Of a stretch of 64,000 nucleotides of DNA, positions 5,101 through 64,000 are shown in pieces. The stretch lies in IMG/VR virus record IMGVR_UViG_3300027770_000027, positions 124,001-188,000 of that record. One strand, given 5' to 3'. Numbering within the stretch: the stretch's first letter is position 1; every line of letters begins with the position of its first letter. Below the pieces are notes generated by a model. The model searched no databases, was not told the origin of the DNA, and saw only the letters and a program-made list of their open reading frames with translations. The position numbers and the translations under genes are program-made.

Positions 5101-5880
5101 AATAACTAAATTACCAGCAATAGTTCCTCCAGAAGCTGGTAATTTAGTAGTATCCGTGCCCCATACTTTAGTTAAATTGCTTCCGTCTCCATAATGAACT
5201 CCACTGACAGAGGGAGAAGAAATAGATGTAGTAAAGGTAGCAACTGCTGGTAATCTGCTGTTATTTAAAGTGCCTTGGCTGATATTGGTGGCATTTAAAC
5301 CTGTCAAATTAGTACCATCACCACTTAAAGATGGAGCAGAAACAGAGGTAGTAAAAGTTGCAACTGCTGGTAATCTGCTGTTACTTAAAGTTCCTTGGCT
5401 AATGTTGGTAGCGTTTAAACCCGTCAAATTAGCACCATCTCCGTAGACGTTACCAGCACTTAAAAATATTGCAGTTAGAGATGTTGCTGTTAAAGATCGA
5501 ACCACTAAAGTACCGTTGATAGTGCCGCCAGATAATGGAAGAGCTGCTGTGGTATTAACTCCAAACAATTTACTACCATCTCCATAAAAAGTACCACTCA
5601 AGGATGGAGCAGAAACAGATGAAGTGAAAGTAGCATTGGCTGGTGGAGTATATTGCGTAGTAATTACTCCAGTTAGACTACTGCCGTCTCCATAAATCTT
5701 GCCTCCGTTACCCGTCGCACACAAATTATTAACATAAAGTGTATTCGTAGTGGCTGTGGTGATATTATTTCCAATAACAAAAGAACCGCTTTGATTGGAT
5801 GTGCTGCCAGAGCCAGCCAATACGCCACTTAAGGCGGTGTCTAACATGCTAGGGATAAGTTTGGTAAGACTTTGACTCAT
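2113..5880 (-). CDS. Tail fibre / receptor-binding protein with 40-aa shaft repeats and BNR/Asp-box-like propeller
   Basis: GDGSxL and LNATNISQGTLxNSRLPAVATFTTS repeats, a NVGIKT fibre motif, repeated SxDYGxT(W/F) boxes and a fibre-type C-terminal domain. Confidence 0.8.
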   Translation of the reverse strand: MSQSLTKLIPSMLDTALSGVLAGSGSTSNQSGSFVIGNNITTATTNTLYVNNLCATGNGGKIYGDGSSLTGVITTQYTPPANATFTSSVSAPSLSGTFYGDGSKLFGVNTTAALPLSGGTINGTLVVRSLTATSLTAIFLSAGNVYGDGANLTGLNATNISQGTLSNSRLPAVATFTTSVSAPSLSGDGTNLTGLNATNISQGTLNNSRLPAVATFTTSISSPSVSGVHYGDGSNLTKVWGTDTTKLPASGGTIAGNLVINNNLTVGTLTVGGSATFVNTVFSTTSSLSVVNVSPVSGVPALYVGQKGPSDIASFYDIDQNVEVLHIGGVNSIYPNVGIKTSAPNKTLTVVGDISSTLGFYGDGSNLTNLDAADIAQGTLSNSRLPAVATFTTSVSAPSLSGDGTNLTGLNATNISQGTLNNSRLPAVATFTTSVSAPSLSGVHYGTYFGDGSKLTGIIASATIALSASATFALSVSAPSLSGTHYGDGKNLINVLGLSPSIGTDTYFNVPYGNVYGSCTDLSGNYIGGYMLNGYTVWKYDPTILDAVQIASVNVANCQALGGPHTLTADNAGNLFYINNTTFTVQKLRTSDSTMTNAASGTRIGTPTMMANALDSSVYTSDTTLISYGAVYKVSPTYVVTLSGTANYKIIGSIDTDSTSTLYALMSTSYNSLYAIGTPNNPLLFVPNTIIDFTIDRSVGSSSSGYIYLLDNVNKLYKTPGPQSPGGINGTLQYVRDIPSVVGGSFSYGNPYINWSSTDTLFWAQTNNGAGNAKKITIPKAYLDSTGNLTLNKIVVGNSVYTPTLSGNRATFNSLSGVHLGDGSSLVNLPAVKGVSSSLPVTLLTTPKVSSLGWNPGDMSNDGKYQLFGIYGGNLWRSADYGTTWSITNGNTIMNYGNVVVCDDGKIQYTVRRFGSVYKSTDYGVTFTTTTYPSLNYQRVAASQDGQYVLAAGDNTQIYTSSDGGVTVVTPTGSTNSVWIGASMSSNGKYQLVSSQSLMKISSDYGATFAQTGPPANFTGATISEDGSYAYATVFGGALYRSTDYGASFTAMSTAPSGVGWSGSIYISGDNSTVVVAISGSPLLVSTDYGANWKYSGLSKNWSGVAGTSDKKYFTGVENLGYIWPSPNGVKPNNIGDTSFGATTLYGSNPLAMDAPRTANYTLTITDAGGAIQMNTTSGVLSAIVPTNSNVAFTIGSQIKVIQTGTNAVSIVAATPATTILCSNSSKFRLNSQWATATLIKIATDTWVVTGDTVV
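4583..5391. repeat. Exact 164-bp direct duplication inside the fibre gene (4583-4746 = 5228-5391)
   Basis: Base-by-base comparison; offset 645 bp, in frame. Confidence 0.85.
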
Positions 5881-5886
5881 ATATTA

Positions 5887-5894
5887 TATTTATA
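5887..5894 (-). promoter_or_regulatory. T4-type late promoter TATAAATA
   Basis: Perfect consensus 6 nt upstream of the ATG at 5880. Confidence 0.8.
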
Positions 5895-5921
5895 GGTAAT
5901 GTGAACTATTTGAAATTATTT

Positions 5922-7337
5922 TTACCAAGTTATTCGTAAACTGGCAGTGCCGGCTCCTGCGGTGATTTGAATCGGTATTGTTGTAGACGATCCTACAAAG
6001 TAAGGCAGATCTAAAGATTGACCGTTTAGACCATTATATCCATCAGATCCCTTACCACCCTTACCAACCTCTCCAGGACTTCCTACTACATTTGCGGAAG
6101 CCGTGCCGGCATTTGCTATAACTATATTCTGACTAGGTTGCCCAGATCCTCCTCCACCGCCACCACCGTTTTGTTTGCTATTTTCATTTTGTCCTCCTCG
6201 GCCACCATTACCTCCAGAAGCTCCTAGAAGTGACTCAGATTGTCCCCCAGCCCCTCCAGCATTACTACCAATGAAATCTGGATTTGTTCCGTTAGCTCCG
6301 TCTGCACCATTACCACCAGACTGAAACCCCTCGCCACCAAGACCCGGATTTGGCCCCCTACCGTCATTACCAGATAACCCGTACGTAACAAAGACACTAG
6401 CTCCACCCCCACCACCACCACCGTATCCTTTTAGACCACCAGCTCCGCCACTATAAGTAGTGGAGCCAAAAATAACAGATTTTCCAGCAGCTCCTTCTGT
6501 ACCATCAATGCCATCTACACCATTTGCACCATTTGAAACACTTACTGGCACATAATACTGCTGTTCATCGGACGGATCTATAATGTAGTCATATGTTACA
6601 TTTATAGGAGCTCCATCAGCTCCATCAGAGCCAGGAGTTCCTGCGGCTCCGTGTCCCGTTACTGCTTGTAATCTAACATAACGTATTCCATAAGGCACTT
6701 GCCAGTTAAAGGAAGTAGTAGTATTTACAAAAGTTTCTCCTCCGGTGGAGGATAAGCCACCGGTCAATGTTTGTGGTTGCCATTCATTATCTGCAGAACT
6801 CCACACTAGGGCCTGTCCGTCTGTTGGAATATTAGTAGACACATTTCGTCCAAGAATTTTAACAGCATCTTCTCCAGCGGCACCGCCCACCAATAACCTT
6901 ACTAAAATTTTAGAGCCTCTTGGTGGAGCACTTGGAAATGTTATGGTTCCTCCAGCAGTTTCTGTTACTGTGTAATCTGTGGGAATTTGATTCAACCCAC
7001 CAATGCTTACTATATAGTTGTTAGAATCTGTTGAATTAAATCCATTTAATGGATAAAAACTAACAGAGGTGCCGTTTCCAACAAATTCATTAGAGGTGGT
7101 CCCTCGTATGGAAAAATTTTCTCTTCCAGTTAAAATAATATTCTGCAATCCAGCTGCAGATCCTAAAAGTTTACTATTAGCACTTAAAGAATTTACAAAC
7201 AAAGTATTAGCTGCAGATGTGGTGATGTTATTTCCAATAATAAAAGACCCTGGGTGTTGGACAACATTATTTTCTCCAGCCAAAACACCACTGGAAGGAA
7301 TTATTAATGTATTGCGGCTAACAGAAGTAAGAGGCAT
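5922..7337 (-). CDS. Glycine-rich fibre/adhesin protein (paralog 1)
   Basis: Shared N-terminal motif, beta-rich FPSAPP module, DGQALVW motif, polyglycine region. Confidence 0.7.
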   Translation of the reverse strand: MPLTSVSRNTLIIPSSGVLAGENNVVQHPGSFIIGNNITTSAANTLFVNSLSANSKLLGSAAGLQNIILTGRENFSIRGTTSNEFVGNGTSVSFYPLNGFNSTDSNNYIVSIGGLNQIPTDYTVTETAGGTITFPSAPPRGSKILVRLLVGGAAGEDAVKILGRNVSTNIPTDGQALVWSSADNEWQPQTLTGGLSSTGGETFVNTTTSFNWQVPYGIRYVRLQAVTGHGAAGTPGSDGADGAPINVTYDYIIDPSDEQQYYVPVSVSNGANGVDGIDGTEGAAGKSVIFGSTTYSGGAGGLKGYGGGGGGGASVFVTYGLSGNDGRGPNPGLGGEGFQSGGNGADGANGTNPDFIGSNAGGAGGQSESLLGASGGNGGRGGQNENSKQNGGGGGGGSGQPSQNIVIANAGTASANVVGSPGEVGKGGKGSDGYNGLNGQSLDLPYFVGSSTTIPIQITAGAGTASLRITW

Positions 7338-7346
7338 ATGTTATAT

Positions 7347-8696
7347 TTACCAAGAAATAGTTAATGTTGCAGACCCGTTTCCAGTAGTAATTTGTACTGG
7401 AATTGAAGATAATCCTTCTACATTGATTCCAGTATCGTAATTTAAACGAGGGCCTCCAGCAGTTCCAGAGCCTCCAGATCCTCCCGCTCCGCCAAGACCC
7501 AACACGAGAATGCCAGCGTTGCCAGCACCACCTCCGCCGCCTCCACCACCACCTCCGGGTCCAGAGGCAGGATCGTTTACGTAAAAGGCACCGGCGCCGC
7601 CTGCTCCTCCAGTTGAAACGTCAGAATTAACCCGGGCGCATCCTAACCCTCCAGTACCACCAGTACCACCGAGTCCGTTGCCAGTATCTGGGGTTGCATT
7701 TGGAGTTACATAAGGATCTGTTTGGCCAGCTCCTCCAAGTCCTCCAAGACCCTCACCATTACCCGCTAAACCGGGTCTACCATTATAAATTCCGCCACCG
7801 CCGCCGCCACCACCACCGAATCCTCCAAGACCTCCAGTGCCTCCCGGAAAAGTGTATTGACCCACTATTACAGATTTACCAGGATCCCCGTTAGCACCAT
7901 TGGCTCCATTAGCACCATCAGACCCGTCTGTTGGAAGACTAGATTCTGGATCTGTGTAACCATCAAGGCCGTTTTCTCCGTTGTGTCCTGGTTCTCCGGC
8001 GGCACCAACGCCAGTGTCTCCGTTTAATCTAAGCCATCTTACCCCAGATGGTATTATAAAATTAAAAGAAGTCACAGAATTAACAGTTGTAGAACCTCCG
8101 GAATTGTATGGAACTGAAGTTGTTTGATTTCTTGGCACCCATTCAGAAGTGGCAGAATTCCATTTCAAAACTTGTCTGTTCTGAGCAGAGTTGTTTGATA
8201 TACTTCTAGATTGGAGGAAAGAAGCAGATCCTCCACCGGGAGCACCTGTTAAAGTTCTTACAGAAATTTTCGCTCGAGCTGGTGGCGCAGTAGGAAAGGT
8301 GATGGTTCCTCTATTTGCTTCAGAAATAGTATAATCAGAAGCAGATTGTGTAATGCCTCCAACTGTGACTATATAAGACTGACTATCAATACCGTTGTAT
8401 CCACTAAGAGGAAAAAAACTAACTCTCACCCCAGTACCGTAAAATTCATTGGCATCTACTCCTCTTAAATTGGAAAAGTCTCTTGGCACTAAAACTATAT
8501 TAGTCAAACTAGTACCGTCTCCAAATATAGCTGAAGTAGCACTTACGGTGGTTGTAAAAAGGGTATTGGGTAATGTTGATGTTAAATTACTACCAATAGC
8601 AAAAGAACTCAGATGGGTAACATTACTGTTAGAACCACCTAAGACCCCACTATAGAGCGGATCAACCATCCCTAGACTGACTTTAGTAAGACTCAT
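7347..8696 (-). CDS. Glycine-rich fibre/adhesin protein (paralog 2)
   Basis: Same architecture as 5922-7337; ends IPVQITTGNGSATLTISW. Confidence 0.7.
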   Translation of the reverse strand: MSLTKVSLGMVDPLYSGVLGGSNSNVTHLSSFAIGSNLTSTLPNTLFTTTVSATSAIFGDGTSLTNIVLVPRDFSNLRGVDANEFYGTGVRVSFFPLSGYNGIDSQSYIVTVGGITQSASDYTISEANRGTITFPTAPPARAKISVRTLTGAPGGGSASFLQSRSISNNSAQNRQVLKWNSATSEWVPRNQTTSVPYNSGGSTTVNSVTSFNFIIPSGVRWLRLNGDTGVGAAGEPGHNGENGLDGYTDPESSLPTDGSDGANGANGANGDPGKSVIVGQYTFPGGTGGLGGFGGGGGGGGGIYNGRPGLAGNGEGLGGLGGAGQTDPYVTPNATPDTGNGLGGTGGTGGLGCARVNSDVSTGGAGGAGAFYVNDPASGPGGGGGGGGGGAGNAGILVLGLGGAGGSGGSGTAGGPRLNYDTGINVEGLSSIPVQITTGNGSATLTISW

Positions 8697-9543: not shown

Positions 9544-12500
9544 TTATTGATAATCCCACAGACGAATCAATCTTTCTACTCCGTGAATGGTTACTTTAAA
9601 GAAATCCCCGCTCGCGACTGTTGGAGTTGATATTGAATATGCGTCTTGGAAGTTGATAATGTCTGAAGAATATAAATCTACAATACCAGTTTTACCGTTT
9701 ATAGTAGATACAGTTGCTGGATATACTCCATAACTATATGTATAAACAATTATAGAAACGCCAGCATCTGGCACGGAAGTAAATTGAACAGATCCGCCGT
9801 TGTATAAACTTATAACATAATCTATATCCGGACGTTGAATAACATTTCCGACCAACACCAGATAATTTCTAGCATTTGTGCGAATTATTCCTCCAGGTGC
9901 TAAGGTGTAGAAGGAGTCTATCCCATTTGAGGTCCTGTTGGTTACTACTGGTGGTGGTATATTGAATCCGTGAAAATTTGTATACCACACGTTAACATTT
10001 GAAACCACTGGTCCAAAATCTGTAGAGGTGAATACTATGGATTTACCGCCGTCTCTAGTGATATTAAAGTCTATTCCGGGTTTTTGAACTACACCATTAA
10101 CAGTCACCAAATAATAGGAAGAATTTGTAGCATATTCTGGTGTAAGGCTAGTTGATAGATTGTACGAGGCGGACGCACTAGTTGCAGTAAAAGAGGTATA
10201 AGAGGTTCTTGGAGTATAACCATTTTCATACTGATTAGATCTTACTTGAACCACCGCACCAGTTGGTGGGGCTGAGTCAAATATTAAAAATCCTTGACCA
10301 TCCCCAGCAGATATAGAATAATTTGATGTCGGTGTTTGTACCACCCCATCAATAGCAATTAAATAATCGGAAGCAACGTCGCCTACAAAAGCGGTAACAG
10401 ATGGAGTATTAGTTAGTAAGAAGGAAGTGGTTGAACTGTCTCCATTAAATGTAGAAAAACTTGGACTTGCATAGTAAATATAAGCTGCTGGAGGTCCTAT
10501 AACAACTGGTACAGTGTTGGTAGGAATTTTAATGTTCTTAATCAACTCTATCACATCTATATTAGCACTCAATAGAGTGCCAGTTGTGTTGATGTTTTTG
10601 CCTTCTATGAAACTAGTTGCACAAAAGGATCTGGCAGTTAATGCTCCTTGACTGACAAAGTCATTAGTAACTGTTAAGTTGTTAGTAACTACAGAATTTG
10701 TTGCTCGGATGTCTGTGGCACTAATCAACGGACTGCTCACTCGTACAGAGCCGTATATTATATTACCTGTAATAGAATTTGCAGATAAAGTATTGCCCAC
10801 ACTTAAATCATCTCTTATTATTGCAGAAACTGTATTTATTGTGCTAGTAATATTGGCATAAGTCCCTTGAACTAAAGAACCAGCACATATATCTCGAGCA
10901 CAAACAAATGTAGTAGAATATATATTATAGCCACTTAAACTTTGTGTTGCTTTGATGTTTGTACCACCACAAATATCTCCAACAGAACATATTACATTAC
11001 CCGATTTAATTAAATTAGAGGCATATATAACATTGTCTGATACTAAACAATCCGTAACACAAGCACTTGGTGATTTTACTAAAGATCTACCACAGATAGT
11101 ATTGCCACAAATAGTATTGTATGTATATAGGTTGTTGCTTACGATTAAACAATCAGTAACACAAGCACTTGGAGCTTTTACTAAAGATCTACCACAAACG
11201 ATATCGCCACAAATAGTGTTTGTGGCGCATATACTTCCACCAGTATTAATGGTGTTGCTAGCGTATATAACATTGTCTGATACTAAACGATCAGTAACAC
11301 AAGCACTTGGGGATTTTACCAAAGTTCTGCCACAAACGATATCGCCACAGATAGTGTTTGTGGCACATATGCTCCCACCTGTATTAATGGTGTTGCTAGC
11401 ATATATGCAATTAGAAGATCCTAGATAATCTGTAACACAAGCACTTGGTGATTTTACTAAAGTTCTGCCACAGATAGTATTACCACAGATGGTGTTTGTT
11501 GTGTATATATTATTGTCTACGATTAAACAATCTGTAACACAAGCACTTGGTGATTTTACTAAAGTCCTGCCGCAGATAGTATTACCGCAAATAGTGTTTG
11601 TTGTATAAATGTTATTATCTACAATTAAACAATCTGTAACACAAGCACTTGGTGATTTTACTAAAGATCTACCACAGATAGTATTACCACAGATGGTGTT
11701 TGTGGCACATATGTTGTTGCTAGAACTTATACAATCTGTAGCTGATACGCTGATGGAAAACATTCCATTAACAGCACATATGTTATTTGCAGAACTTAAA
11801 TTGTTAACAAATGTGTGATTGTGGCACACTGCATTTAAGTTAGATCCTAAAATGAAAACATTATTAAAGATTTTAGAATCATTGTCAAATCCACCGGCAA
11901 TGAAAGAATTATCAGAAGAGGATTTATTACCACTACCCGCTCCTATAAATGTGTAGTTACCAGATGAAGTATTCTTTAAACCACTTCCTATAAAGGATTG
12001 AATACCAGAGGCAACTCCACTGATACCGTTGACAATTGTAGAGAAACAATTAGAAGCATTGTTATACTGTCCAGCCCCTACAATTGAATTAGCACTTAAT
12101 ACTGTGTTATTAGTACCACCAGCTATGATAGAATTACTTCCACATACAACATTAGATTCACCTGCTAAGATGGCATTTGAATTGTTATATGTTTTATTTA
12201 ATTGGCCGGCTCCAATTAAATTATAAGAACCCGCTGCAATATTTGAATTACCCGCAATTATGGAAGAGTAATCTGCAGAGGATTGATTGCTACTACCTGC
12301 AGCAACAAACGTATAATGGCCAGAAATTGTATTTTTAACTCCACCAGCAAGAACACTACAATTACCAGACACATTTCCACTCAAACCACCGACAATAGAA
12401 GAATGTGATCCAGAAACAATATTACGTTCTCCAGCCCCTATAAAAGTTTGAACTGCTGCGGATGAGTTGTTAAGACCCGAACTGATTACAGAATTGGCAC

Positions 12501-15500
12501 TTAATGCTGTGTTACTAGTACCCGCACCGATGATAGAACTGTTGCCACAGGCAATATTAAACTCCCCGGCAACAACAGCACTTGAATTGCAATAAACTTT
12601 ATTTGATTGACCAGCTCCAACAATATTACAAGCTCCGAACGTTTTGTTGTTATTACCAGAAACTATAGCTGAATAATCTGCATTTGCGGCATTTGCACTA
12701 CCCGCTACCACTGTGGTGTAATTGCCATTTACTATATTGTTTCTGCCACCCACCAAAGAACTACAACTACCAGCAACATTCCCACTCAAACCACCAACTA
12801 TAGAAGAATGATTTCCAGAGACAGTATTACCTTCTCCCGAGCCTACAAAGGCATTGTTGCCCGAGGAGGTGTTAGTACCACCACCAACAATGGCAGAAGA
12901 ATTTCCAGAATTAACATTACAGCACCCAGCTGCAATGTGAGAAAACCCTCCACTTACTGTATTACAAAGCCCTCCTCCGAGTGTGCTACAATTACCAGAC
13001 ACATTTCCACTCAAACCACCGACAATAGAAGAATGTGATCCAGAAACAATATTACGTTCTCCAGCCCCTATAAAAGTTTGAACTGCAGAAGAATTATTAC
13101 AGAGACCGGCTCCGATAATTGAATTAGCACTTAATGATATGTTACTAGTCCCGCCGCCTATAACAGAGTTGTTGCCACAAACTGTATTAGAATCTCCAGC
13201 CAAAATAGCACTTGAATTGCAATTGGTTTTATTTGACTGACCCGCTCCTATAATATTGCAATTACCATTAGAAATATTAGTACTACCAGAAATGATTGTT
13301 GAAGCATGACCACTTACAGTATTGGCTTTGCCTCCTATAACAACGCTGCAGTTACCGGTTACATTACTACTTAAACCACCCACTATGGAAGAGTGTTGGC
13401 CAGAAACTATATTATATTCTCCAGCACCGATAAAGGTTTGAGCCCCGGAGGTATTATTACCCGATCCCGCTGCTATGAAAGAATTAGTTGCTGTTACAGT
13501 GTTACTGTTGTTAACTCCACCGCCTATAATAGAATTGTTTCCGCAAGCTGTGTTACATTCACCAGCTAAGATAGCATTTGAATTGTTACAGACTTTGTTT
13601 AATTGTCCAGATCCTATAAAATTGTAGTTACCATTAGTTTGGTTAACCGCTCCAGCAACAATAGCTGAATAATTTGCGTTGGCTAAATTGGCGCTACCAG
13701 CACCCACTAATGTATAATTGCCTGTTACAGTATTTTTAGTACCACTGTCAATACTACTGCAGCTGCCAGACACCCGACCACTTAAACCACTTATTATAGA
13801 AGAGTGTTGACCAGAAACAGAATTAGCTTCCCCTGATCCTATAAAAGTTTGAACCGCAAAAGAATTATTACAAACTCCAGATCCTATAAAAGAACTAGCA
13901 CTTAAGGCGGTGTTTGTGGTGCCAGATCCGATGAGGGAATTGTTACCACACACGTTATTGCCGTACCCAGCAATAATGGCACTGGAATTTCCTGAAGTTT
14001 GATTAAATTGTCCAGCACCGATTAAATTATAACCAGCTGTGCCAGAAAGAGTAACAACGTTGTTTATACCTGCAAGTATTGCAGAGTGATCTGAACATAC
14101 GGTATTGTTGACCCCAGTCCCTATAAGAGAATTGGAACCATTGACTGTGTTTAATCTACCACCTACTAGGGAAGCACATGTCCCAGTAACCTTATTGCAA
14201 CAACCTCCAACAATAGATGCATGTGAGCCAGTAACAACATTACAATCACCTGCGCCTATGAAGGTTTGAATGTTATTAGCAGTGTTACAAGAACCAGCAC
14301 CGATGAAAGAATTTGCGCTTAAGGAAATGTTATTAGTTCCCGCTCCTATAACGGACTTGGTTCCACAAAGAGTGTTGGTTTCTCCTGCGATAATTGCATT
14401 GGAATCACAATAAGATTTGTTTTGTTTACCCGCTCCTATTAAGCTACAAGATCCGGATACACAATTGCTTCCTCCGGTTAAAATGGAAGAATAATCACCA
14501 GTCACTTTGTTGCTACTTCCCGCAGCAACAAAGGCATAATTACCAGCGATATTATTAAATTTACCACCACCAACAACACTACAGCTACCAATTACATTAC
14601 TACTAAAACCCCCCACAATAGACGAATGGTCACCATAGACTATGTTGGAACATCCTCCTCCTATGAGGGAAAGATTTCCAGATGCCGTATTAGAACATCC
14701 CGTAACAATACCAGAGGCATTTCCACTGACTACGTTTACGCCGCCGGCACCTATTACAGATAAATTTGAACTTACCGCGTTTGCATTTCCACCCACTATG
14801 GAACTTTGTATACCAGATACATTATTAGAATAACCTGCGGTTACACTAGAATCGGAATTAGTAACCTCATTGCTTCTACCAGCAGTAACAGAAGAGCTAC
14901 AGCCACGAACAATGTTTTGACTACCGGCTCCAACGAAAGAATTTGCACTTAAAGATTGATTTGAACAACCAGCAACGACTCCAGAATATATGTTACAAAC
15001 AGAATTGCTTCTACCAGCAGCAATGACACTACAATTTCCGTTTATAATTTGATTGTATTGTCCAGCTTCTACGACAGAACTATCAGAATTTCTAATTAAA
15101 TTTGAATCCCCGGCGCCTATATAGGAAGTAGTACCACAACTTGCATTATTAGTACCACCAATAATAGTGTTATGAGCGCCTTGGGTACAGTTATTATAAC
15201 CACCCACTATAGCAGAAAATTCATTTCTTGTCAGATTGCAACAACCAGCACCTATAAAAGAATTTGCACTTAAAATTGTATTACTTGTACCCCCTCCAAT
15301 AATACTGTTAATACCATCACTAGAATTTAATACACCAGCACCGACCATGGAGTACTCCCCATTACTGGTATTATTGCCACCAGCCACAACAGCCGACTGT
15401 AAGCCAATAGTTTTATTATAACAACCAGCACCTATGAAAGAATATGGTCCGAATGCATATGCACACAAACCACCAACAATAGTTGCGAAATCTCCAGGGG

Positions 15501-31826: not shown

Positions 31827-31838
31827 TAAATATTTATA
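31827..31838. promoter_or_regulatory. Palindromic late-promoter element between divergent genes
   Basis: TAAATATTTA gives TAAATA on both strands; TATAAATA on the minus strand. Confidence 0.6.
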
Positions 31839-39381: not shown

Positions 39382-39433
39382 ATTTGATATTGTTAAATAT
39401 TTATACTTAAAGGGTGTCCTATCAACAATTTGC

Positions 39434-51242: not shown

Positions 51243-51983
51243 TTATAATACTGTGCAATTATATTTTTGCCAATCAATGATTCGCGAATATTGTAGAGGA
51301 TCTACCTTTTTAAGTTGGATCCAGCCTGCCAATCTTGCTGAACAACTTGGACATTCTCCACATGACTTTTCGTGTTCGGTATAGCAAGTACGAGTTTGTG
51401 TAAAATCTACACCCAATTCAATTCCATATTCTATAATTTCTTTTTTTGTTTTATCAATTAAAGGTGCTTTAATTTCTATTTGTTTGCGCCTGTTCAAAGA
51501 AAGAATAGTATTTAACCGGTTCCTAAATCCTGGTGTACAATCCCAGAACCCAGAAGTATCATCTGCTTTGGCAGCTCCGTATAGAACATGTTCTGCTCCT
51601 ACACTTTCTGCCATACCAATTGCCAAAGACAAAAATATCATATTTCTATTGGGAACGTATGCAGTATTTTGTGGATCTCCGATAACCTCTTTCATTTTAG
51701 GAACATCTACGTCATCTCTTGTCAAGGCTGAATCAAATTTTAAAAATTTTAAAGCTAATGGAAATCTACTATACTTTATTTTTTCAGCATGTTTTGATTT
51801 AAAAATAATATTTGTAATATAATCCTCTGCTCTGGTTAATTCACTGATATTTCTTTGTCCGTAATCTATACCTAAAGCATATACTTGTTCATAATTTGTC
51901 AATGCATGATGCAAAACAACTGTGCTATCCATGCCACCACTGTATAAAACAACACAAGACTTCGGAGAAAACGATGTATCCAT
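51243..51983 (-). CDS. queC: 7-cyano-7-deazaguanine synthase
   Basis: SGGMDS, YGQRN, YVPNRN, DC, and TCY...CGECPSC Zn site. Confidence 0.93.
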   Translation of the reverse strand: MDTSFSPKSCVVLYSGGMDSTVVLHHALTNYEQVYALGIDYGQRNISELTRAEDYITNIIFKSKHAEKIKYSRFPLALKFLKFDSALTRDDVDVPKMKEVIGDPQNTAYVPNRNMIFLSLAIGMAESVGAEHVLYGAAKADDTSGFWDCTPGFRNRLNTILSLNRRKQIEIKAPLIDKTKKEIIEYGIELGVDFTQTRTCYTEHEKSCGECPSCSARLAGWIQLKKVDPLQYSRIIDWQKYNCTVL

Positions 51984-52001
51984 ATGGTAAATATAGTATA
52001 A

Positions 52002-52571
52002 ATGAAAACTTCGAAGAAATCTAGCAAAAAGAATCAAAAAGTGTATAGCAAAGCACAGAAAAGTGAAGTTGCACGAATTTTAAAGTCAAATCAGCAAGAA
52101 TGTGGGTGTGATGAATCTTATGTTCCATTTCTTAAAAGTTTTATCAAACATTTAGTAAGAGAAGCAGATGAAGCTCCAGCTGTAGAACCCCAGGACCCAC
52201 AAAGTTTTACACAAGATCAAAATCAAAAAGATTTTAAGGGATCTTTAGAGCCATCTACACAGCCAGACCAATTTGATACAGAAGGAACTGATCCAAATCT
52301 GGCTGCTGATGCTATTGCTTCTATTACAGAATGGTCGGGTAGATTGGAGGAGTTTGCAAAATTCTTAAATAGTCCGGATAGCCAGTCTTTACATGCTACA
52401 TTAGCAGCTCAGGATCGTCCGGGTTCTTTGTTAAGAGGAGTTACTCGTAAAGCATCTGATAGTATTACACGTATTGCAGGAGAAGTAGAAAAACTTAAAG
52501 AGGTTCTTAATCAATTTATTATTATGGCTCCTAAAAAACAAAGAGATACAGATCAACTTAAAATGGCTTAA
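52002..52571 (+). CDS. Hypothetical late protein (possible internal head protein)
   Basis: 189 aa; TAAATA at 51988-51993. Confidence 0.65.
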   Translation: MKTSKKSSKKNQKVYSKAQKSEVARILKSNQQECGCDESYVPFLKSFIKHLVREADEAPAVEPQDPQSFTQDQNQKDFKGSLEPSTQPDQFDTEGTDPNLAADAIASITEWSGRLEEFAKFLNSPDSQSLHATLAAQDRPGSLLRGVTRKASDSITRIAGEVEKLKEVLNQFIIMAPKKQRDTDQLKMA

Positions 52572-56305: not shown

Positions 56306-57670
56306 TTAAGCAATAACCTCTTTGACCACATTTCCGTATACATCTGTGAGCCTAAATGGTCTACCATTGTATTCATAAACAAGTTTGGTGTGATCAAATC
56401 CCATCAAAGCAAGCATGGTTGCATGGAGATCGTGAATATGAACAATATCTTTGACTGATTTACCTCCAGTTTCATCAGTCTCTCCGTAACGCTGCCCACC
56501 TTTAACTCCACCTCCGGCCATCCAAACACTAAAGGCTTTGCCGTTGTGATCTCTTCCTGGAGCGCCTACTCCACCACCTGCCTGGACTGTACGACCAAAT
56601 TCTCCACCCCAAACCACAAGAGTAGAATCCAGCATCCCTCTTTGCTTCAAGTCTGTAAGAAGAGCACCAAATGGCTGATCGTATCTTCCTGCAGTTCTTG
56701 TCATGGCGTTCTTAATATCCATGTGATGATCATAGCCACCTACATTCACCTGCACAAAACGAACTCCACGTTCAACCAAACGTCTTGCAAGCAACATCTT
56801 AGCCCCTTCCTCAGTTTCACCGTACAAAGCCTTTGCTTCTGCAGATTCTTTAGAGATATCAAAAGCATCAGTAGCTTCAGTTTGCATTTTAAATGCTGTT
56901 TCAAAAGCCTCGATGCGTGACTCAAGCTGGGCATCTCTTTGAAGTTTTGCGAGATGGTTTGAGTTCAGTGTATTTGCAAAATTAATCTGCCTTCTTTGTC
57001 TTTCAAGAGTAGAAAATTCGCTGCGAATGTTGGCTAAAATCTGTTCTGCTTTTATTCCTCTACGATATGATACGTTACAACCCTGATACATTCCTGGCAA
57101 GAAAGCACATTGTCTCCATTCTGAAGCTCCGTTTAAGGAAATAAATCCAGGCATGCTTTGATTCTCTGTACCCAGCCCATACACCATCCAAGATCCCATG
57201 CTAGGCTTGGAAAGCTGAGCAGATCCAGTTGCCATCATTTTTTGAGCAATATTATGATCTGGAATTTCTGTCTGCATGCTGTTAATGATAGCAATATCAT
57301 CAGCATGGCTTCCCAATTGAGACCAAACTTCTGAATAATGAATACCAGATTTTCCAAACTGTTTGAACTCAAAAGGAGAAGCTAGCAAATTGCCAAACTC
57401 ATGTTTTACTCCATCTCTCTTTTGAAGTTCTGGTTTGTAATCAAACGTGTCAACATGAGATGGTGCTCCAGTTGCAAACAAGTGAATGATAGATTTTGCT
57501 TTCACTGGCCAGTGAGGCTTTTTTGGAGCAGTTGGAGAAACTGCTTCAGCTGTCATTGGATTTAAACCATAAAGAGAAGCCAATGAAAGTCCTCCAAGTC
57601 CCCAACCAAAGTCGGTAAGGAATTCTCTACGTGTTTGTGGGTCGCTATTGTGATGTCCGCAGTCGCTCAT
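56306..57670 (-). CDS. DUF1501-family protein with twin-arginine signal
   Basis: TRREFL, PSHVDTFDYKP, ARRLVERGVRFVQ, YDHH, GEFGRT, GRDHN, DLHAT. Confidence 0.92.
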   Translation of the reverse strand: MSDCGHHNSDPQTRREFLTDFGWGLGGLSLASLYGLNPMTAEAVSPTAPKKPHWPVKAKSIIHLFATGAPSHVDTFDYKPELQKRDGVKHEFGNLLASPFEFKQFGKSGIHYSEVWSQLGSHADDIAIINSMQTEIPDHNIAQKMMATGSAQLSKPSMGSWMVYGLGTENQSMPGFISLNGASEWRQCAFLPGMYQGCNVSYRRGIKAEQILANIRSEFSTLERQRRQINFANTLNSNHLAKLQRDAQLESRIEAFETAFKMQTEATDAFDISKESAEAKALYGETEEGAKMLLARRLVERGVRFVQVNVGGYDHHMDIKNAMTRTAGRYDQPFGALLTDLKQRGMLDSTLVVWGGEFGRTVQAGGGVGAPGRDHNGKAFSVWMAGGGVKGGQRYGETDETGGKSVKDIVHIHDLHATMLALMGFDHTKLVYEYNGRPFRLTDVYGNVVKEVIA

Positions 57671-57676: not shown

Positions 57677-58936
57677 TTAGGCTAAAAGTTCTTTTACTAC
57701 AGTCCCATTATACACTATTGCTACAGGACGTCCATCTGGAGTTTCTAGTTTAGAATCGGGATTAATTCCAATTTGATTATACATCGTAGCTGCAAGATTT
57801 TCTGGTGATAGAGCTGACTCTTCGACATCTCCGCCAGTAGCATCAGATGCTCCGTGAATATAACCTCTCTTAATACCTCCACCAGCTAGAGCTACTGAGA
57901 ATACTCTCGGCCAGTGATCTCTTCCGCCGTCTTTATTAATTTTAGGAGTACGACCAAATTCAGAACTTACCATAACAAGAGTAGAATCTAACATGCCACG
58001 TTGATCTAGATCTGTAATAAGAGCAGCATATGCTTGATCAAATGCAGGTAAGGTTTTGTTCATGTTTGCACCAATATTAGTATGCATGTCCCAACCACCA
58101 TAAGTGACAGATACAAAGCGTACTCCAGACTCTACCAACCGACGAGACATTAATAGTCTTTGACCTGCTTGATTAAGGCCATAAGCTTCTCTTAGGGCAT
58201 CTGATTCTTTAGTTAAATCAAAAGCTCCCTTCGCCTTTGGAGAAGAAATTAAATCATATGCTTGCTGATAGAAAGTATCCATTGCAGCAAGGTTGTCACT
58301 CTTTTCGAGATATCTAAAATGTTTATCTACGGTATCAAGAATACTACGTCTTTTATCAAATCGTTCTTCACTAACAGTTGATTGCAAATCTCTTACCTTA
58401 AATCCTGGAGCAGCTGGATCAGAGCCAAGACTAAAAGGACCGTAAGCGTTAGATAAATAACCAGTACCAGCGACTTCCCCATGAGCGTTAGGAACAGAAA
58501 CATAAGCTGGCAAACTATTACGACCACCTAATTGTTGAGCTGTTACTGAACCAAAAGAAGGATATGTCACAGCAGGAGATGGACGATAACCAGTAAACAT
58601 AGTGGATGTACCTCTTTCATGAGCTGCATCTCCGTGAGTCATGGAACGGACTACTGAAATTTTATCTGCAATTTTTGCTGTCTTTGCTAAATTTTCTGAA
58701 AAGTGGACTCCGGGAATTACTGTCTGCACAGATTTGAGAGGCCCTCTATACTCTGCAGGGGCTAAAGGTTTTGGATCCCACATTTCTTGCGCTGCAGCTC
58801 CACCGGGCAAATAAATGTGAATGACTGATTGAGCTTTTGGGGTGAGGGGCGACTCTGCTTGAAGTTTTAAGGCGTCTCCTAACGAAAGACCTAAACCTCC
58901 AAATAGACCAGTGTAAAGAAAATCACGTCTGTTCAT
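57677..58936 (-). CDS. DUF1501-family protein with twin-arginine signal
   Basis: MNRRDFL, WDPKP, SRRLVESGVRFV, GGWDMH, SEFGRTP, GRDHWP. Confidence 0.92.
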   Translation of the reverse strand: MNRRDFLYTGLFGGLGLSLGDALKLQAESPLTPKAQSVIHIYLPGGAAAQEMWDPKPLAPAEYRGPLKSVQTVIPGVHFSENLAKTAKIADKISVVRSMTHGDAAHERGTSTMFTGYRPSPAVTYPSFGSVTAQQLGGRNSLPAYVSVPNAHGEVAGTGYLSNAYGPFSLGSDPAAPGFKVRDLQSTVSEERFDKRRSILDTVDKHFRYLEKSDNLAAMDTFYQQAYDLISSPKAKGAFDLTKESDALREAYGLNQAGQRLLMSRRLVESGVRFVSVTYGGWDMHTNIGANMNKTLPAFDQAYAALITDLDQRGMLDSTLVMVSSEFGRTPKINKDGGRDHWPRVFSVALAGGGIKRGYIHGASDATGGDVEESALSPENLAATMYNQIGINPDSKLETPDGRPVAIVYNGTVVKELLA

Positions 58937-60109: not shown

Positions 60110-60579
60110 TTTTTTGTTATTTTAATGATAAATTCTGTTTCTTCACCGGTGAGATCTACACATTTTAATCCTTTATAAAATCTTCCAGAAGTATTAAAAT
60201 TAAAAATATCTGGAATATTGTCGTAAAAATAAGTATTACAATTTTTTTTAAAAATTTTGTATATAGATTTTATTACAAATTCTTTATTGTCTATATAATT
60301 GTCAAAAATATCTGGTATAGTGTAGTTTTTACTAACTGTCAAAATCTTAATATTATAATTCTGATAAACAATTCTAATATCAAATATAATATCAGAAATT
60401 TCTTTTTCAACAAAAAATTTAAAATATTTTTCTCTACCGGTAATTTTTTTATTTTTAAGTAAATCCCATTCAGTGTACTTGTTAACAATACGGGTTAAAA
60501 AGCTATCCAAGTAATTATGGAAAGGGAAAATTATGATTCTCTGGGGTAAGTGTACAACCAGATGATCTTTAATGTTCAT
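60094..60579 (-). CDS. Hypothetical protein
   Basis: AT-rich ORF; likely start MNIKDHL. Confidence 0.5.
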   Translation of the reverse strand: MNIKDHLVVHLPQRIIIFPFHNYLDSFLTRIVNKYTEWDLLKNKKITGREKYFKFFVEKEISDIIFDIRIVYQNYNIKILTVSKNYTIPDIFDNYIDNKEFVIKSIYKIFKKNCNTYFYDNIPDIFNFNTSGRFYKGLKCVDLTGEETEFIIKITKKWTSM

Positions 60580-61105: not shown

Positions 61106-61184
61106 ATTGTTATTTAGGGGATTTTAAAAACAATGCCATAAAAATGTTTCAAGAGTGTAAATATAGAAGAACATTTTATCTTCT

Positions 61185-64000
61185 ATGGGACTCCAAATAT
61201 ACAATCAACCCCAGGTCATTAACACCCTTATAGCCACCAATATATCTTCCCCTTCTTTGAGTGGTGTTCATTATGGAGACGGTGCGCCTCTGACAGACTT
61301 AAACGCTACCAACATTAGTCAAGGCACTTTAAATAACAGTAGACTGCCGGCAGTTGCAACCTTTACTACGTCTATTTCTTCTCCCTCTGTTAGTGGAGAT
61401 GGTGCTAATTTGACGGGTTTAAACGCTACCAACATTAGTCAAGGCACTTTAAATAACAGTAGACTGCCAGCAGCTGCAACTTTTGCTACCAGTGTTTCTT
61501 CCATAACTGTCAGTGGAGATGGTGCTAATTTGACGGGTTTAAACGCTACCAACATTAGTCAAGGCACTTTAAATAACAGTAGACTGCCAGCAGTTGCAAC
61601 TTTTGCTACCAGTGTTTCTTCCATAACTGTCAGTGGTATTTTTTATGGTGATGGTAGTAATTTATCAAATTTAGACGCTGGAGATATCATCCAGGGCACC
61701 TTAAACAACAGCAGATTACCAGCCGTTGCAACTTTTACCACCAGTGTTTCATCACCGGCCTTAAGTGGTAATCATTATGGAGATGGTTCTGCGTTGACTA
61801 ATTTAAACGCAACCAACATTGCCAGTGGTACTTTAAACAATAGTAGGTTACCTGCTATAGCCACCTTTACCACCTCAGTGTCTTCCCCAGCTTTAAGTGG
61901 TAATCATTATGGAGATGGTAGTAAATTGACCGGGGTGGTTCTTTCTACCGGTGGAACCATAACCGGTGACTTGAATATCACCGGTAATTTAAGTGCTCTA
62001 GGCACCACTACTCAAATAGACACCATGGTATTTGTTACTAGTGCAGTTTCTGTAACTAATACTGGTACTGGACCTGCTTTGTATGTAAAACAAACAGGTA
62101 GTAATGATGTGGCATCATTTTATGACGACACAACTTCAGCATTAATTATTAAAGACGGTGGTAATGTTGGTATTGGAGACAGCTCTCCCGGTTCTAAGTT
62201 ATCTGTTTATTCTTCTTCTGATACGCAACCAGCAGTAACTATTACTCAACTTGGAACTGCAAATGCTCTTATTATTGAAGATTCTACGAGCCCTGATAAT
62301 ACCCCATTTGTTATTGATGCAGATGGAAACGTCTTAATAGGATTATCAGCTACGTATGCAAGTCCGTTTAACTACCCCTTCCAAATATCCAGAGCAGGAA
62401 CTAGTGGAGCCACTTTTGCAAGATTCACGAACAGCACTTCTAGCGCAGGATTGAGATTTGCAAAATCTCGTGGATCCACCAACGGAACTTTTAGTGGTGG
62501 ACTTAGCTCAGGAGACAACATTGGAGTAATAGATTACTACGGAGACAATGGGGCCCTTAGTGCAACAAGAACTGCGTGGATTGCAAACGAAGCAGACGGT
62601 CTATTTACAGCTTCCAGTGCTCCAAGTAGATTCACAATTGCTACAACAGCTTCAGGATCAACAACTCCTGTTGAACGTTTGCGGATTGATAATGTCGGCA
62701 ATGTTGGTATTGGAGATACTTCTCCAAACTCCAAACTATCAGTTTACTCCACTTCTAATACAGAAGCCGCAGTAACTATTAACCAAACCGGAACAGGAAA
62801 CGCATTTGTTGTAGAAGATTCCACGAGTCCTGATAGCACACCGTTTGTAATTGATGCAGACGGAAACGTAATTGTTGGGGGACTTTCTGCATATAATGAT
62901 TCTACTACTACTGCTTCCAATAGTCGGATGCAATTACAAGTAGTAAGACAAGGTAACATTTCTTCTAGAATGGGTATGTGGACTTTCTCCACTCAAGTTG
63001 GAGATCGTGGAATATTTTCATTTAACAAATCAGCTGCAACTACTACAGGAATTGCTTCTGCTGTTTCAATTAATGAAGACATTGGTTCTATAGATTTTAA
63101 CGGTTACGATAAAGCTGTTGTTCCTGTTTTGCAAAGAGCAGCAATGATTTTAGGGGAAGTTGACGGAGTACCACTTTCAGGATCCGTTCCCGGAAGAATA
63201 AGCTTCCTTACTACTTCATCAGGGTCTGATGATGTTACAGAAAAAATGCGGATTACCAATGACGGCAAGGTTGGTATTGGGACCGAAGCCCCGGGTGAAA
63301 AATTGACGGTAGCTGGAAACATCAGTGCCCAAGGAAACATCAGCTCTACTTTTTACGGTTCTAATGGATTCGTAAAAGACGCGCTAAATCCAGGAATTTC
63401 ATCCTTCAAATCCTCTAATTCTAGATTTGATCTTCCATCTCAAGCTGCTTTTGACAGTTCTGGCAATTTATACATTTCCAGCAATCGTGCCATTCGCAAG
63501 ATAACTCCAGCCGGTGTAGTTTCAACTTTTGCGGGTTCACCGGGACAATCCGGTACATCAAATGGTACAGGAACCGCCGCCAGATTCAACACTCCAACTG
63601 GAATGGCGTTTGATTCCAGCGGCAATCTATTCGTAGCAGACTTCGGCAATAACAACATTCGTAAAATAAGTCCAGCTGGGGTGGTGTCCTCTTTTGCTGG
63701 TTCAACTGCAGGGCTCTCCGGATCAACAAACAATTCAACGGGATCTTCTGCTAGATTTTACGGACCAATTGGTGTTGCCATAGATTCTTCTAATAATTTA
63801 TTTGTAGCAGACTCTGTCAACAACACTATCCGCAAGATAACTGCTGCTGGTGCGGTAACCACTTTTGCTGGTATAGTGGGCTCAACAGGCTCGACAGATG
63901 GGGCCGGAACCGTAGCCACATTCTGGGAACCACATGGGATCACCATAGATTCTAGTAACACGTTATACGTTGCAGATAGAAACAATGCAAAAATTCGTAA
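61185..64000 (+). CDS. Tail fibre protein with 40-aa shaft repeats, GNVGIG motifs and NHL repeats, partial (runs off window end)
   Basis: Not in the ORF track. Read from ATG 61185 (MGLQIYNQPQV...); LNATNISQGTLNNSRLP repeats; FNTPTGMAFDSSGNLFVAD NHL repeats; TAAATA at 61158. Confidence 0.85.
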   Translation, partial: MGLQIYNQPQVINTLIATNISSPSLSGVHYGDGAPLTDLNATNISQGTLNNSRLPAVATFTTSISSPSVSGDGANLTGLNATNISQGTLNNSRLPAAATFATSVSSITVSGDGANLTGLNATNISQGTLNNSRLPAVATFATSVSSITVSGIFYGDGSNLSNLDAGDIIQGTLNNSRLPAVATFTTSVSSPALSGNHYGDGSALTNLNATNIASGTLNNSRLPAIATFTTSVSSPALSGNHYGDGSKLTGVVLSTGGTITGDLNITGNLSALGTTTQIDTMVFVTSAVSVTNTGTGPALYVKQTGSNDVASFYDDTTSALIIKDGGNVGIGDSSPGSKLSVYSSSDTQPAVTITQLGTANALIIEDSTSPDNTPFVIDADGNVLIGLSATYASPFNYPFQISRAGTSGATFARFTNSTSSAGLRFAKSRGSTNGTFSGGLSSGDNIGVIDYYGDNGALSATRTAWIANEADGLFTASSAPSRFTIATTASGSTTPVERLRIDNVGNVGIGDTSPNSKLSVYSTSNTEAAVTINQTGTGNAFVVEDSTSPDSTPFVIDADGNVIVGGLSAYNDSTTTASNSRMQLQVVRQGNISSRMGMWTFSTQVGDRGIFSFNKSAATTTGIASAVSINEDIGSIDFNGYDKAVVPVLQRAAMILGEVDGVPLSGSVPGRISFLTTSSGSDDVTEKMRITNDGKVGIGTEAPGEKLTVAGNISAQGNISSTFYGSNGFVKDALNPGISSFKSSNSRFDLPSQAAFDSSGNLYISSNRAIRKITPAGVVSTFAGSPGQSGTSNGTGTAARFNTPTGMAFDSSGNLFVADFGNNNIRKISPAGVVSSFAGSTAGLSGSTNNSTGSSARFYGPIGVAIDSSNNLFVADSVNNTIRKITAAGAVTTFAGIVGSTGSTDGAGTVATFWEPHGITIDSSNTLYVADRNNAKIR
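61295..61640 (+). repeat. 120-bp near-identical tandem repeats (about 3 copies, with further degenerate copies to about 61920)
   Basis: Sequence lines starting 61321, 61441 and 61561 are nearly identical. Confidence 0.85.

What the first reader, a model, noticed from the sequence alone, without database searches (positions are those of the whole stretch)
5399..61558. Two oppositely oriented fibre genes 56 kb apart share a repeat module with a 44-bp exact inverted match
Seen: 5399-5442 is the exact reverse complement of 61395-61438 and of 61515-61558, synonymous positions included. Both genes share the 40-aa LNATNISQGTLNNSRLPAVATFTTS repeat and the following ALYV..G..D.ASFYD segment. Their downstream regions differ: BNR-like propeller versus NHL repeats. 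Inference: recent gene conversion or recombination. A crossover would swap the receptor-binding C-termini and invert the intervening region, giving a recombinase-free route to host-range shuffling.
Basis: partly seen in the sequence, partly recalled or inferred. Interest (0 to 1): 0.6.

Follow-up and report, generated by a model that had tools for sequence, protein, structure and literature searches.

The report
Fibre-gene repeats homogenised by recombination
Two oppositely oriented tail-fibre genes of an uncultured freshwater T4-like phage share a repeat module that has recently exchanged DNA between them, which is ordinary phage fibre mosaicism, and nothing shows that the 56 kb between them ever flips.

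Summary
The 44 nt at 5399-5442 are the exact reverse complement of 61395-61438 and 61515-61558, in the same codon phase. Only two genes in the 227-kb genome carry this 40-aa repeat. Gene A (2113-5880, minus strand, 1255 aa) has a BNR/sortilin propeller. Gene B (61185 to 65858, past the window end, 1557 aa) has an NHL propeller.

Recent exchange between the two repeat arrays is supported:
- Synonymous codons match far more often in the repeats (0.62-0.71) than in the adjoining collar (0.43; 0.38 expected from codon usage).
- Repeat units group by genome, not by orthology.
- Unit A1 is a B-type head joined to an A-type tail. Eight of 230 triplet tests pass Bonferroni correction.

The 44-nt run taken alone is only marginal (permutation P 0.016-0.06).

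The inversion and host-range idea has no support. Independent assemblies from other samples cover each junction, and all show the parental arrangement. No chimeric protein exists among 5.8 billion proteins. Three relatives lack gene B and its adjacent SegE-like homing endonuclease, so the inverted pair is a lineage-specific accident. No raw reads were available.

A 123-nt exact direct repeat inside gene A, and a 4- versus 5-unit variant of gene B, are better recombination substrates than the 44-mer.

Verdict: concerted evolution of fibre shaft repeats, a known kind.

The parts
2113..5880 (-). Gene A, 1255 aa fibre protein (P0001). Order: A-type N-terminal anchor, degenerate YGDG repeats, units A1-A2, collar, units A3-A4, unknown middle domain, BNR/sortilin-like propeller, C-terminal minor-tail-protein domain.
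   Evidence: ORF list; translation; Pfam; PHROG phrog_8780 at residues 1157-1252
5399..5442 (-). 44-nt exact block in gene A: the last Gly codon before unit A1 plus the A1 head.
   Evidence: a separate 44-nt Logan unitig at 2.29x single-copy depth
5200..5439 (-). Units A1 (5320-5439) and A2 (5200-5319). A1 is a B2/B3-type head (nt 1-41) joined to an A3-type tail. A2 is an A4-type head joined to a B1-type tail.
4801..5199 (-). Collar of gene A (residues 228-360; ALYV..ASFYD, NVGI..P.K.LTV). About 50% aa identity to the collar of B, with synonymous sites saturated.
4555..4794 (-). Units A3 (4675-4794) and A4 (4555-4674).
4583..4705 (-). 123-nt exact direct repeat, copy 1 (copy 2 is 5228-5350, 645 nt away, in frame). 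Independent contigs break here.
   Evidence: L010 ends at 4705; L051 ends at 5269
5228..5350 (-). 123-nt exact direct repeat, copy 2.
2491..3333 (-). BNR / Sortilin-Vps10-like beta-propeller of gene A (about residues 850-1130).
   Evidence: Pfam PF15902 E 1.3e-9 and PF15899; ortholog in G005
5887..5894 (-). TATAAATA (T4 late-promoter-like) just upstream of the gene A start codon. The motif is not enriched in the window.
61185..64000 (+). Gene B, 1557 aa fibre protein (P0003). It continues to window-equivalent 65858. Order: B-type N-terminus, units B1-B5, collar, two Bd2133-like fibre domains, six-bladed NHL propeller, further collar segments, C-terminal tail-fibre domain.
   Evidence: Pfam; PHROG tail fiber phrog_9942/18345/11355; PDB
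61395..61438 (+). 44-nt exact block, copy in unit B2.
61515..61558 (+). 44-nt exact block, copy in unit B3.
61278..61901 (+). Units B1-B5 (61278-61397, 61398-61517, 61518-61637, 61650-61769, 61782-61901). B2 and B3 are 98% identical. One assembly has one unit fewer.
61896..62219 (+). Collar of gene B (residues 238-345).
63411..64000 (+). Start of the NHL propeller (residues 743 to about 1060; runs past the window end).
61106..61184 (.). Divergent intergenic region between the minus-strand structural block and gene B.

Best explanation
Genes A and B are two modular tail-fibre genes of an uncultured freshwater T4-like myovirus. Each joins its own class of N-terminal anchor to a common shaft module and then to a different beta-propeller tip. 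The shaft module is a set of 40-aa repeats of the PF06598 type plus a collar.

The repeat units evolve in concert. Homologous recombination (gene conversion and unequal crossing-over) copies short tracts between units, both within each gene and between the two genes. It is presumably carried out by the phage's own UvsX/UvsY-type machinery during recombination-dependent replication. The 44-nt identity is the longest such tract: the head of unit A1 carries the B-lineage sequence.

Gene B, together with an abutting SegE-like GIY-YIG homing endonuclease gene, is most simply a lineage-specific insertion at the edge of the structural block. The inverted, 56-kb-apart arrangement is therefore incidental and not a switch.

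Shown here: the repeats, the mosaic structure, the synonymous-site contrast, the clustering by genome, the parental arrangement in independent assemblies, and the absence of B in relatives. Inferred: the enzymes involved, the B-to-A direction of the A1 tract, and insertion rather than loss of B.
For: 1. Codon identity at identical residues is 0.62-0.71 in A-versus-B repeats. It is 0.43 in the adjoining collar and 0.46 in the N-termini. Codon usage predicts 0.38.
2. A and B units are 81-87% identical in DNA. A units are only 65-76% identical to the units of the orthologous gene P0004 in a relative. That ortholog's own pre- and post-collar units are 99% identical to each other, with a 148-nt exact match. 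This is the signature of concerted evolution.
3. In maximum-chi-square triplet tests, 27 of 230 give P<0.01 (2.3 expected) and 8 pass Bonferroni. A1 = B2/B3 head + A3 tail has P<=5e-5. B1 and A2 share a tail.
4. Exchange within genes is even stronger: a 123-nt exact direct repeat in A, and B2/B3 at 98%.
5. A variant of gene B with 4 rather than 5 units, otherwise identical, occurs in another sample.
6. The genome encodes a RecA/UvsX-like protein and UvsY, and no serine or tyrosine recombinase.
7. G001, G002 and G005 have 1.2-1.7 kb where G000 has 6.4 kb holding gene B and segE.
8. The same module occurs in over a hundred metagenomic fibre proteins (180 and 103 hits) carrying a range of different Pfam-annotated tips, and each N-terminal class is seen with several tips.
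9. Mosaic fibre genes, and exchange at conserved motifs, are established for T4-type phages (PMC3157838, PMC2993671).
Against: The longest-run statistic alone is weak (P 0.016-0.06). The triplets share sequences and are not independent. All units are short (120 nt), so tract ends and direction are uncertain. No recombination event was observed directly. The 4-unit variant could be an assembly collapse of the 98%-identical B2 and B3. Loss of gene B in three relatives, rather than gain in this lineage, is not excluded. A single recent module transfer would leave much of the same pattern as ongoing conversion.
Confidence: 0.7

Rival explanations
1. The inverted in-frame repeats act as a recombination switch. 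Crossovers flip the 56-kb structural block and swap the two tips between the two N-terminal anchors, giving population-level fibre variation without a dedicated invertase.
For: The arms are inverted and in the same codon phase. DNA has demonstrably moved between the two arrays. The phage has its own general recombination genes. IR-flanked segments of about 30 kb that coexist as two isomers are reported in Anabaena cyanophages, with no dedicated recombinase identified (bioRxiv 10.64898/2026.02.14.705889).
Against: Only 44 nt are identical, within 275 nt at 82%. The cyanophage inverted repeats are 400-700 nt. The independent assemblies are all parental. No chimeric protein exists in the 5.8e9 collection. 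Gene B is absent from three relatives, and in another relative it lies in tandem with the A-type gene. The A-type anchor with a BNR tip is also found in G005 and in P0033. The swap would create no new tip.
Confidence: 0.06
2. One recent event rather than continuing conversion. When gene B arrived, possibly with the homing endonuclease gene, part of its repeat array was copied from gene A, or A's from B. Alternatively both took the module from a third phage. The identity is the not-yet-decayed trace of that single transfer.
For: Gene B plus segE looks like an insertion. Similarity is confined to the repeats, while the collar and N-terminus are saturated.
Against: At least two separate, non-collinear tracts link A and B: the A1 head with the B2/B3 head, and the A2 tail with the B1 tail. 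These are interleaved with A-specific sequence. Homogenisation within genes is clearly repeated, and it also occurs in the relative's ortholog.
Confidence: 0.17
3. No exchange at all. The similarity is inherited, kept by strong purifying selection on the repeat peptide together with codon bias. The 44-nt run is a chance extreme.
For: The peptide is almost invariant over those 14 codons. Run-length permutation is only marginal.
Against: Synonymous identity of 0.62-0.71 against 0.38 expected and 0.43 in the collar. Significant switches of nearest relative along single units. Units cluster by genome. In a relative with tandem B-type and A-type genes, the longest exact match is 22 nt.
Confidence: 0.05
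4. Assembly artefact: repeat collapse or a wrong path through the assembly graph created the identity or the chimeric unit A1.
For: Contigs from two other samples break inside the gene A repeats. One assembly has one B unit fewer. A k=31 graph cannot link the two sides of the 44-mer.
Against: The contig from sample 3300009161 is 100% identical over window 13337-5269, across the 44-mer. It carries the 5-unit gene B at exactly the same distance. The 44-nt unitig has 2.29x single-copy depth, and boundary-spanning unitigs exist on both sides.
Confidence: 0.02

Closest known systems
Recombination between conserved motifs in T-even distal tail-fibre and adhesin genes (Tetart et al. 1996 and 1998, as summarised in PMC3157838)
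   Same: Conserved short motifs are embedded in otherwise divergent fibre genes. Exchanges occur in or next to these motifs. Motif-flanked segments are duplicated. The process relies on the phage's efficient general recombination.
   Different: There, the exchange is between alleles of co-infecting phages at one locus and was shown experimentally to change host range. Here, it is between two non-allelic genes of one genome, inverted and 56 kb apart, and is only inferred from sequence.
Invertible tail-fibre segments of Mu (G/Gin), P1 (C/Cin) and related systems
   Same: Inverted repeats within fibre coding sequence. Inversion would re-pair a fibre N-terminus with another C-terminus.
   Different: Those systems have an adjacent serine invertase, short defined crossover sites, a few-kb segment and one constant N-terminal exon. 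None of these is present here.
IR-flanked ~30-kb genomic isomerism in Anabaena cyanophages (bioRxiv 10.64898/2026.02.14.705889)
   Same: A large segment bounded by inverted repeats in a phage, with no dedicated recombinase identified.
   Different: Those inverted repeats are 400-700 nt and conserved in position among nine phages, and both isomers were shown by PCR and read mapping. Here the arms are 275 nt at 82% with 44 nt exact, are lineage-specific, and only one orientation is seen.
Gene conversion by free-standing homing endonucleases in T4-type phages (seg and mob genes; PMC2993671)
   Same: A SegE-like GIY-YIG gene abuts the 3' end of gene B. Uneven distribution of homing endonuclease genes and fibre mosaicism are both hallmarks of T4-type hypervariable regions.
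   Different: No cleavage site or homing event is shown here. The link between segE and the arrival of gene B is an inference from co-absence in relatives.
PF06598 Chlorovirus glycoprotein repeat / YGDGS-type fibre shaft repeats
   Same: Both proteins score above the Pfam gathering threshold. The same 34-40-aa unit recurs in many metagenomic phage fibre proteins.
   Different: The unit here is a specific 40-aa subtype (..LNATNISQGTLNNSRLP..) with unusually high DNA identity between copies.

Membership tests
Site-specific invertible fibre segment (Gin/Cin/Hin type) | A serine (or tyrosine) recombinase encoded next to the invertible segment | tested here: not met
   PF00239 and PF00589 give no match anywhere in the 227-kb genome, which CheckV rates 100% complete. 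Controls were positive.
Site-specific invertible fibre segment (Gin/Cin/Hin type) | A few-kb segment with one constant N-terminal exon outside it and alternative C-terminal exons inside | tested here: not met
   Both genes are complete with their own starts. Their 5' ends lie inside the 56-kb interval, which holds the head and tail genes.
Homologous-recombination shuffling at conserved fibre motifs (T4-type) | A conserved motif shared by fibre genes whose flanks are divergent | tested here: met
   Repeats are 76-85% aa and 78-83% nt identical, against a collar at 50% aa; the tips are unrelated.
Homologous-recombination shuffling at conserved fibre motifs (T4-type) | Mosaic breakpoints that fall in the motif | tested here: met
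   Triplet maximum-chi-square tests; 8 of 230 pass Bonferroni.
Homologous-recombination shuffling at conserved fibre motifs (T4-type) | Recombinants with exchanged tips recovered and altered in host range | not testable with these tools
   The phage is uncultured and its host is unknown. No chimera was found in databases.
IR-flanked genomic isomerism (Anabaena cyanophage type) | Both orientations coexist in the population | tested here: inconclusive
   Only k=31 Logan contigs were served, and they cannot bridge 44 nt. The independent larger-k assemblies are all parental.
IR-flanked genomic isomerism (Anabaena cyanophage type) | Inverted repeats conserved at the same positions in relatives, with orientation differing among them | tested here: not met
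   G001, G002 and G005 lack gene B at the site. L048 has the two gene types in tandem.
T4-like myovirus (Straboviridae-like) | gp23-type major head protein, gp20-type portal, sheath stabiliser, UvsY and RecA/UvsX | tested here: met
   phrog_138 E 3e-86, phrog_213 E 2.5e-100, phrog_227; UvsY; RecA family. The head protein is only about 35% identical to cyanophage gp23.
PF06598 Chlorovirus glycoprotein repeat | Score above the Pfam gathering cut-off (27 bits) | tested here: met
   32.3 bits for A and 28.6 bits for B.
NHL-repeat beta-propeller (tip of B) and BNR/Sortilin-Vps10 propeller (tip of A) | Pfam score above the gathering cut-off | tested here: met
   NHL 76.8 bits (cut-off 20). Sortilin-Vps10 37.8 bits (cut-off 33). 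BNR_6 32.6 bits (cut-off 27). NHL also matches PDB teneurin-like and TRIM71 chains.

The most novel reading that the evidence does not exclude
At low frequency, the phage's own UvsX/UvsY recombination crosses over between the in-frame inverted repeats. This flips the entire 56-kb structural block and produces virions whose BNR and NHL tips sit on swapped anchors. It would be an invertase-free, homology-driven analogue of the Mu G segment. The frequent conversion tracts would be the footprints of abortive or non-crossover events.
Probability: 0.06. Interest if true: 0.65.

Novelty: new member of a known kind. Interest (0 to 1): 0.3.

Why it matters
The locus is a clean natural example of concerted evolution acting between two non-allelic fibre genes of one phage genome. 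It shows how a shared shaft module keeps distant fibre genes recombinable. This helps explain why fibre tips are so freely re-assorted among uncultured freshwater T4-like phages.

For scans of this kind it is also a caution. An exact inverted match inside repeat-rich fibre genes is expected from homogenisation and does not by itself indicate an inversion switch. The direct repeats inside gene A and the unit-number variant of gene B are the more likely sources of real structural polymorphism. They are also a recurring cause of contig breaks.

Tried and rejected
- **Megablast against the phage collection.** 11.5 kb of the structural block gave no match. Protein-level search shows only distant cyanophage relatives, about 35% identical.
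- **Exact 44-mer search.** IMG/VR gave nothing. The metagenome contigs gave only the source contig, Ga0209086_10000004. No alternative junctions were found that way.
- **Close relatives of A and B in IMG/VR.** Only identical fragments (L010, L016) and distant hits were returned. The contig carrying P0004 is not in IMG/VR and could not be opened as a handle.
- **Reads.** Only two runs hold the stretch, both as Logan k=31 contigs. They cannot link the two sides of a 44-nt repeat, so hybrid junctions remain untested.
- **The X2 joint.** The X2 joint '5438 -> 5199, goes back 240' is not read as a unit-number variant of gene A. A contig from the B1-tail/B2-head junction of a gene B homologue would map on gene A in exactly this way, because gene B was not in the stretch laid.
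- **Depth of the 44-nt unitig.** At 2.29x, it cannot decide between two and three copies, because the two-copy unitigs read 1.69-1.84x.
- **T4 late promoter motif.** TATAAATA occurs 6 times against 9.8 expected, so it is not enriched, although three copies sit just upstream of gene starts.
- **Longest-run permutation.** Used as the sole test it was too weak and was replaced by triplet tests. The first version of that script timed out.
- **Not run.** Structure prediction, complex prediction and the large representative-protein search were left out, because family scans and the word search already settled the domain identities.

Full report
**Where the window lies.** The window is bases 124,001-188,000 of a 227,352-nt metagenomic virus contig, Ga0209086_10000004, from freshwater sample 3300027770. 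CheckV rates it 100% complete. It encodes a gp23-type major head protein, a gp20-type portal and a sheath stabiliser. It also encodes UvsY and a RecA/UvsX-like protein. The head protein is only about 35% identical to cyanophage gp23. This is a distant, uncultured T4-like myovirus with an unknown host. Almost the whole window is one minus-strand structural block. Gene B is transcribed divergently from the far end of that block.

5399-5442 is the exact reverse complement of 61395-61438 and 61515-61558, and no longer exact match exists between the two genes.
- Gene A (2113-5880, minus strand, 1255 aa) has four copies of a 40-aa unit. They form two pairs on either side of a collar segment.
- Gene B (61185 to window-equivalent 65858, 1557 aa) has five tandem copies followed by a similar collar.
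- No other gene in the genome has this unit.
- The tips are a BNR/Sortilin-Vps10 propeller in A and a six-bladed NHL propeller in B.
- PHROGs call B a tail fibre protein, and call the C-terminus of A a minor tail protein domain.
- The 44-mer is in the same codon phase in both genes.

**Is the match more than chance?** Among units that are already 80-87% identical, a 41-nt run inside a unit is only marginally unusual. Permutation gives P=0.016 for columns and 0.06 for codons. Three other results carry the case for exchange.
1. At identical amino acids, codons are identical in 62-71% of cases in A-versus-B repeats. The figure is 43% in the adjoining collar and 46% in the N-termini. Codon usage predicts 38%. 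At the DNA level the repeats are therefore far younger than the sequences on either side of them.
2. Units group by genome. A and B units are 81-87% identical. A units are only 65-76% identical to those of P0004, the clear ortholog of A in a 227,922-nt relative (54% identity over the first 600 residues, same repeats-collar-repeats layout). P0004's own pre- and post-collar units are 99% identical to each other, with a 148-nt exact match.
3. Single units are mosaics. A1 matches B2/B3 at all informative sites up to nt 41, and then matches A3 at all the rest. A2 and B1 share a tail. Of 230 triplets, 27 give P<0.01 (2.3 expected) and 8 pass Bonferroni.

The codons in the A1 head are shared by B1, B2 and B3 but not by A2 or A4. 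This suggests a B-to-A tract, but that direction is an inference.

**Exchange within the genes is stronger than between them.**
- Gene A contains a 123-nt exact direct repeat (4583-4705 = 5228-5350) and a 66-nt exact direct repeat, 645 nt apart and in frame.
- B2 and B3 are 98% identical.
- Contigs from two other samples end exactly inside the gene A repeat, at 4705 and at 5269.
- The assembly from sample 3300010885 gives a gene B that is identical except for one 40-aa unit fewer. This may be a real unequal-crossover polymorphism or an assembly collapse.

These direct repeats are better recombination substrates than the 44-nt inverted block.

**Test of the inversion idea.**
- A 176,950-nt contig from sample 3300009161 is 100% identical to window 13337-5269. 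It therefore crosses the 44-mer with gene A sequence on both sides. It carries the 5-unit gene B at exactly the expected distance.
- The 136,942-nt contig of sample 3300010885 holds the same gene layout from gene A to beyond gene B. Its DNA could not be fetched.
- So junction A is parental by sequence in two samples and by gene layout in a third, and junction B is parental in all three. No recombinant junction appears.
- The chimeric proteins expected from a crossover would be about 1180-1220 aa and 1590-1630 aa. They fall inside the length windows of both word searches and would have scored near the top. None was found.
- Raw reads were not available. Both runs that hold the stretch are served only as k=31 contigs, which cannot bridge a 44-nt repeat.
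- In the probable source run, the 44-nt unitig has 2.29x single-copy depth, and unitigs span both of its boundaries in gene A. The repeat is therefore real in the reads.

**Relatives.**
- Three relatives with portal proteins 73-76% identical (G001, G002, G005) have only 1.2-1.7 kb between the ortholog of the 295-aa gene and uvsY. This genome has 6.4 kb there, holding gene B and a SegE-like GIY-YIG homing endonuclease gene that abuts B's stop codon.
- Gene B plus segE is therefore most simply a lineage-specific insertion, and those relatives have no inverted pair.
- G005 does have an ortholog of A, with the A-type N-terminus and a BNR-like propeller.
- In another freshwater relative (L048), a gene with a B-type N-terminus and a gene with an A-type N-terminus lie in tandem on one strand, 826 nt apart. 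Both have different tips, and their longest exact match is 22 nt.
- The repeat-plus-collar module occurs in well over a hundred metagenomic proteins carrying a range of different tips. These include NHL, BNR, SGNH hydrolase, pectate-lyase-like and S74 chaperone domains. Each N-terminal class is seen with several tips.

On evolutionary time tips are clearly re-assorted. This is well known for T4-type phages (PMC3157838, PMC2993671).

**Mechanism.** No serine or tyrosine recombinase is encoded, so a Gin/Cin-type switch is excluded. The phage has RecA/UvsX- and UvsY-like proteins, and uvsY lies just downstream of gene B. The likeliest mechanism is therefore short-tract gene conversion and unequal crossing-over among repeat units during recombination-dependent replication. 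This step is inferred, not shown.

A reciprocal crossover in the 44-mer would be in frame. It would invert the block and re-pair anchors with tips. It would add no new tip, and the arrangement it needs is not conserved. A recent preprint shows that IR-flanked segments of about 30 kb can coexist as two isomers in Anabaena cyanophages (10.64898/2026.02.14.705889). That case involves inverted repeats of 400-700 nt that are conserved in position. I put the functional-switch reading at about 6%.

**Verdict.** 'Recent exchange' is supported. 'Inversion-based host-range shuffling' is unsupported. The feature is a new example of a known kind: mosaic phage fibre genes whose shaft repeats evolve in concert.

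Noticed in passing
window 4583-4705 and 5228-5350 (also 4681-4746 = 5326-5391): Gene A holds 123-nt and 66-nt exact direct repeats, 645 nt apart and in frame. Recombination here would delete or duplicate a 215-aa segment (unit, collar, unit). Contigs from samples 3300010885 and 3300009161 end inside these repeats.
   Followed up: partly
window 61398-61637 (units B2/B3); P0014 from sample 3300010885: A gene B variant that is identical except for one 40-aa unit fewer (1517 vs 1557 aa). The 5-unit form is seen in two samples and the 4-unit form in one. It may be a real polymorphism or an assembly collapse.
   Followed up: partly
G000:C1:189859-190275 (window-equivalent 65859-66275, minus strand; L045:1-417): A SegE-like GIY-YIG homing endonuclease gene (PF19835, E 1.5e-27) directly abuts the stop codon of gene B. 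It is followed by a 77-aa ORF, uvsY and a DEAD/ResIII helicase gene. Gene B and segE are absent together from three relatives.
   Followed up: partly
window 56306-57670 and 57677-58936 (minus strand): Two tandem DUF1501 proteins (E 2.9e-134 and 5.7e-111) lie inside a phage structural region. This is an unusual cargo of unknown role.
   Followed up: no
window 51243-52037 (minus strand): A QueC homologue (PF06508, E 1.2e-53). It hints at 7-deazaguanine synthesis and possibly DNA modification by this phage.
   Followed up: no
window 9544-16095 (minus strand): A 2183-aa protein built of 45-nt-periodic repeats. It matches the 'grass antifreeze beta roll' family (PF21300, six stretches, E 3.7e-27) and is probably a giant beta-solenoid fibre. 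Its counterpart in relative L048 is 1349 aa.
   Followed up: no
window 5922-7337 and 7347-8696 (minus strand): Two glycine-rich, higher-GC (about 47%) low-complexity ORFs lie just upstream of gene A and have no family match. Their Gly-codon tracts attract many unrelated contigs: depth spikes up to 1384 and many spurious 'skip' joints.
   Followed up: no
window 17699-20239 (minus strand): An 846-aa protein with RCC1-like propeller repeats (phrog_4219). It is conserved in the same position in relative L048 (824 aa; Pfam RCC1 and WD40_RLD).
   Followed up: no
window 5887-5894, 31831-31838, 39398-39405 (minus strand): TATAAATA (T4 late-promoter consensus) sits 6-17 nt upstream of three gene starts, including gene A. 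The motif is not enriched in the window overall.
   Followed up: partly
gene B residues about 346-715 (window 62220-63329): Two tandem copies of a domain of about 180 aa. It matches Bdellovibrio fibre proteins of solved structure (Bd2133, 8ond; 'cell wall surface anchor family protein', 8ojn and 8oml) and PHROG tail-fibre families.
   Followed up: no
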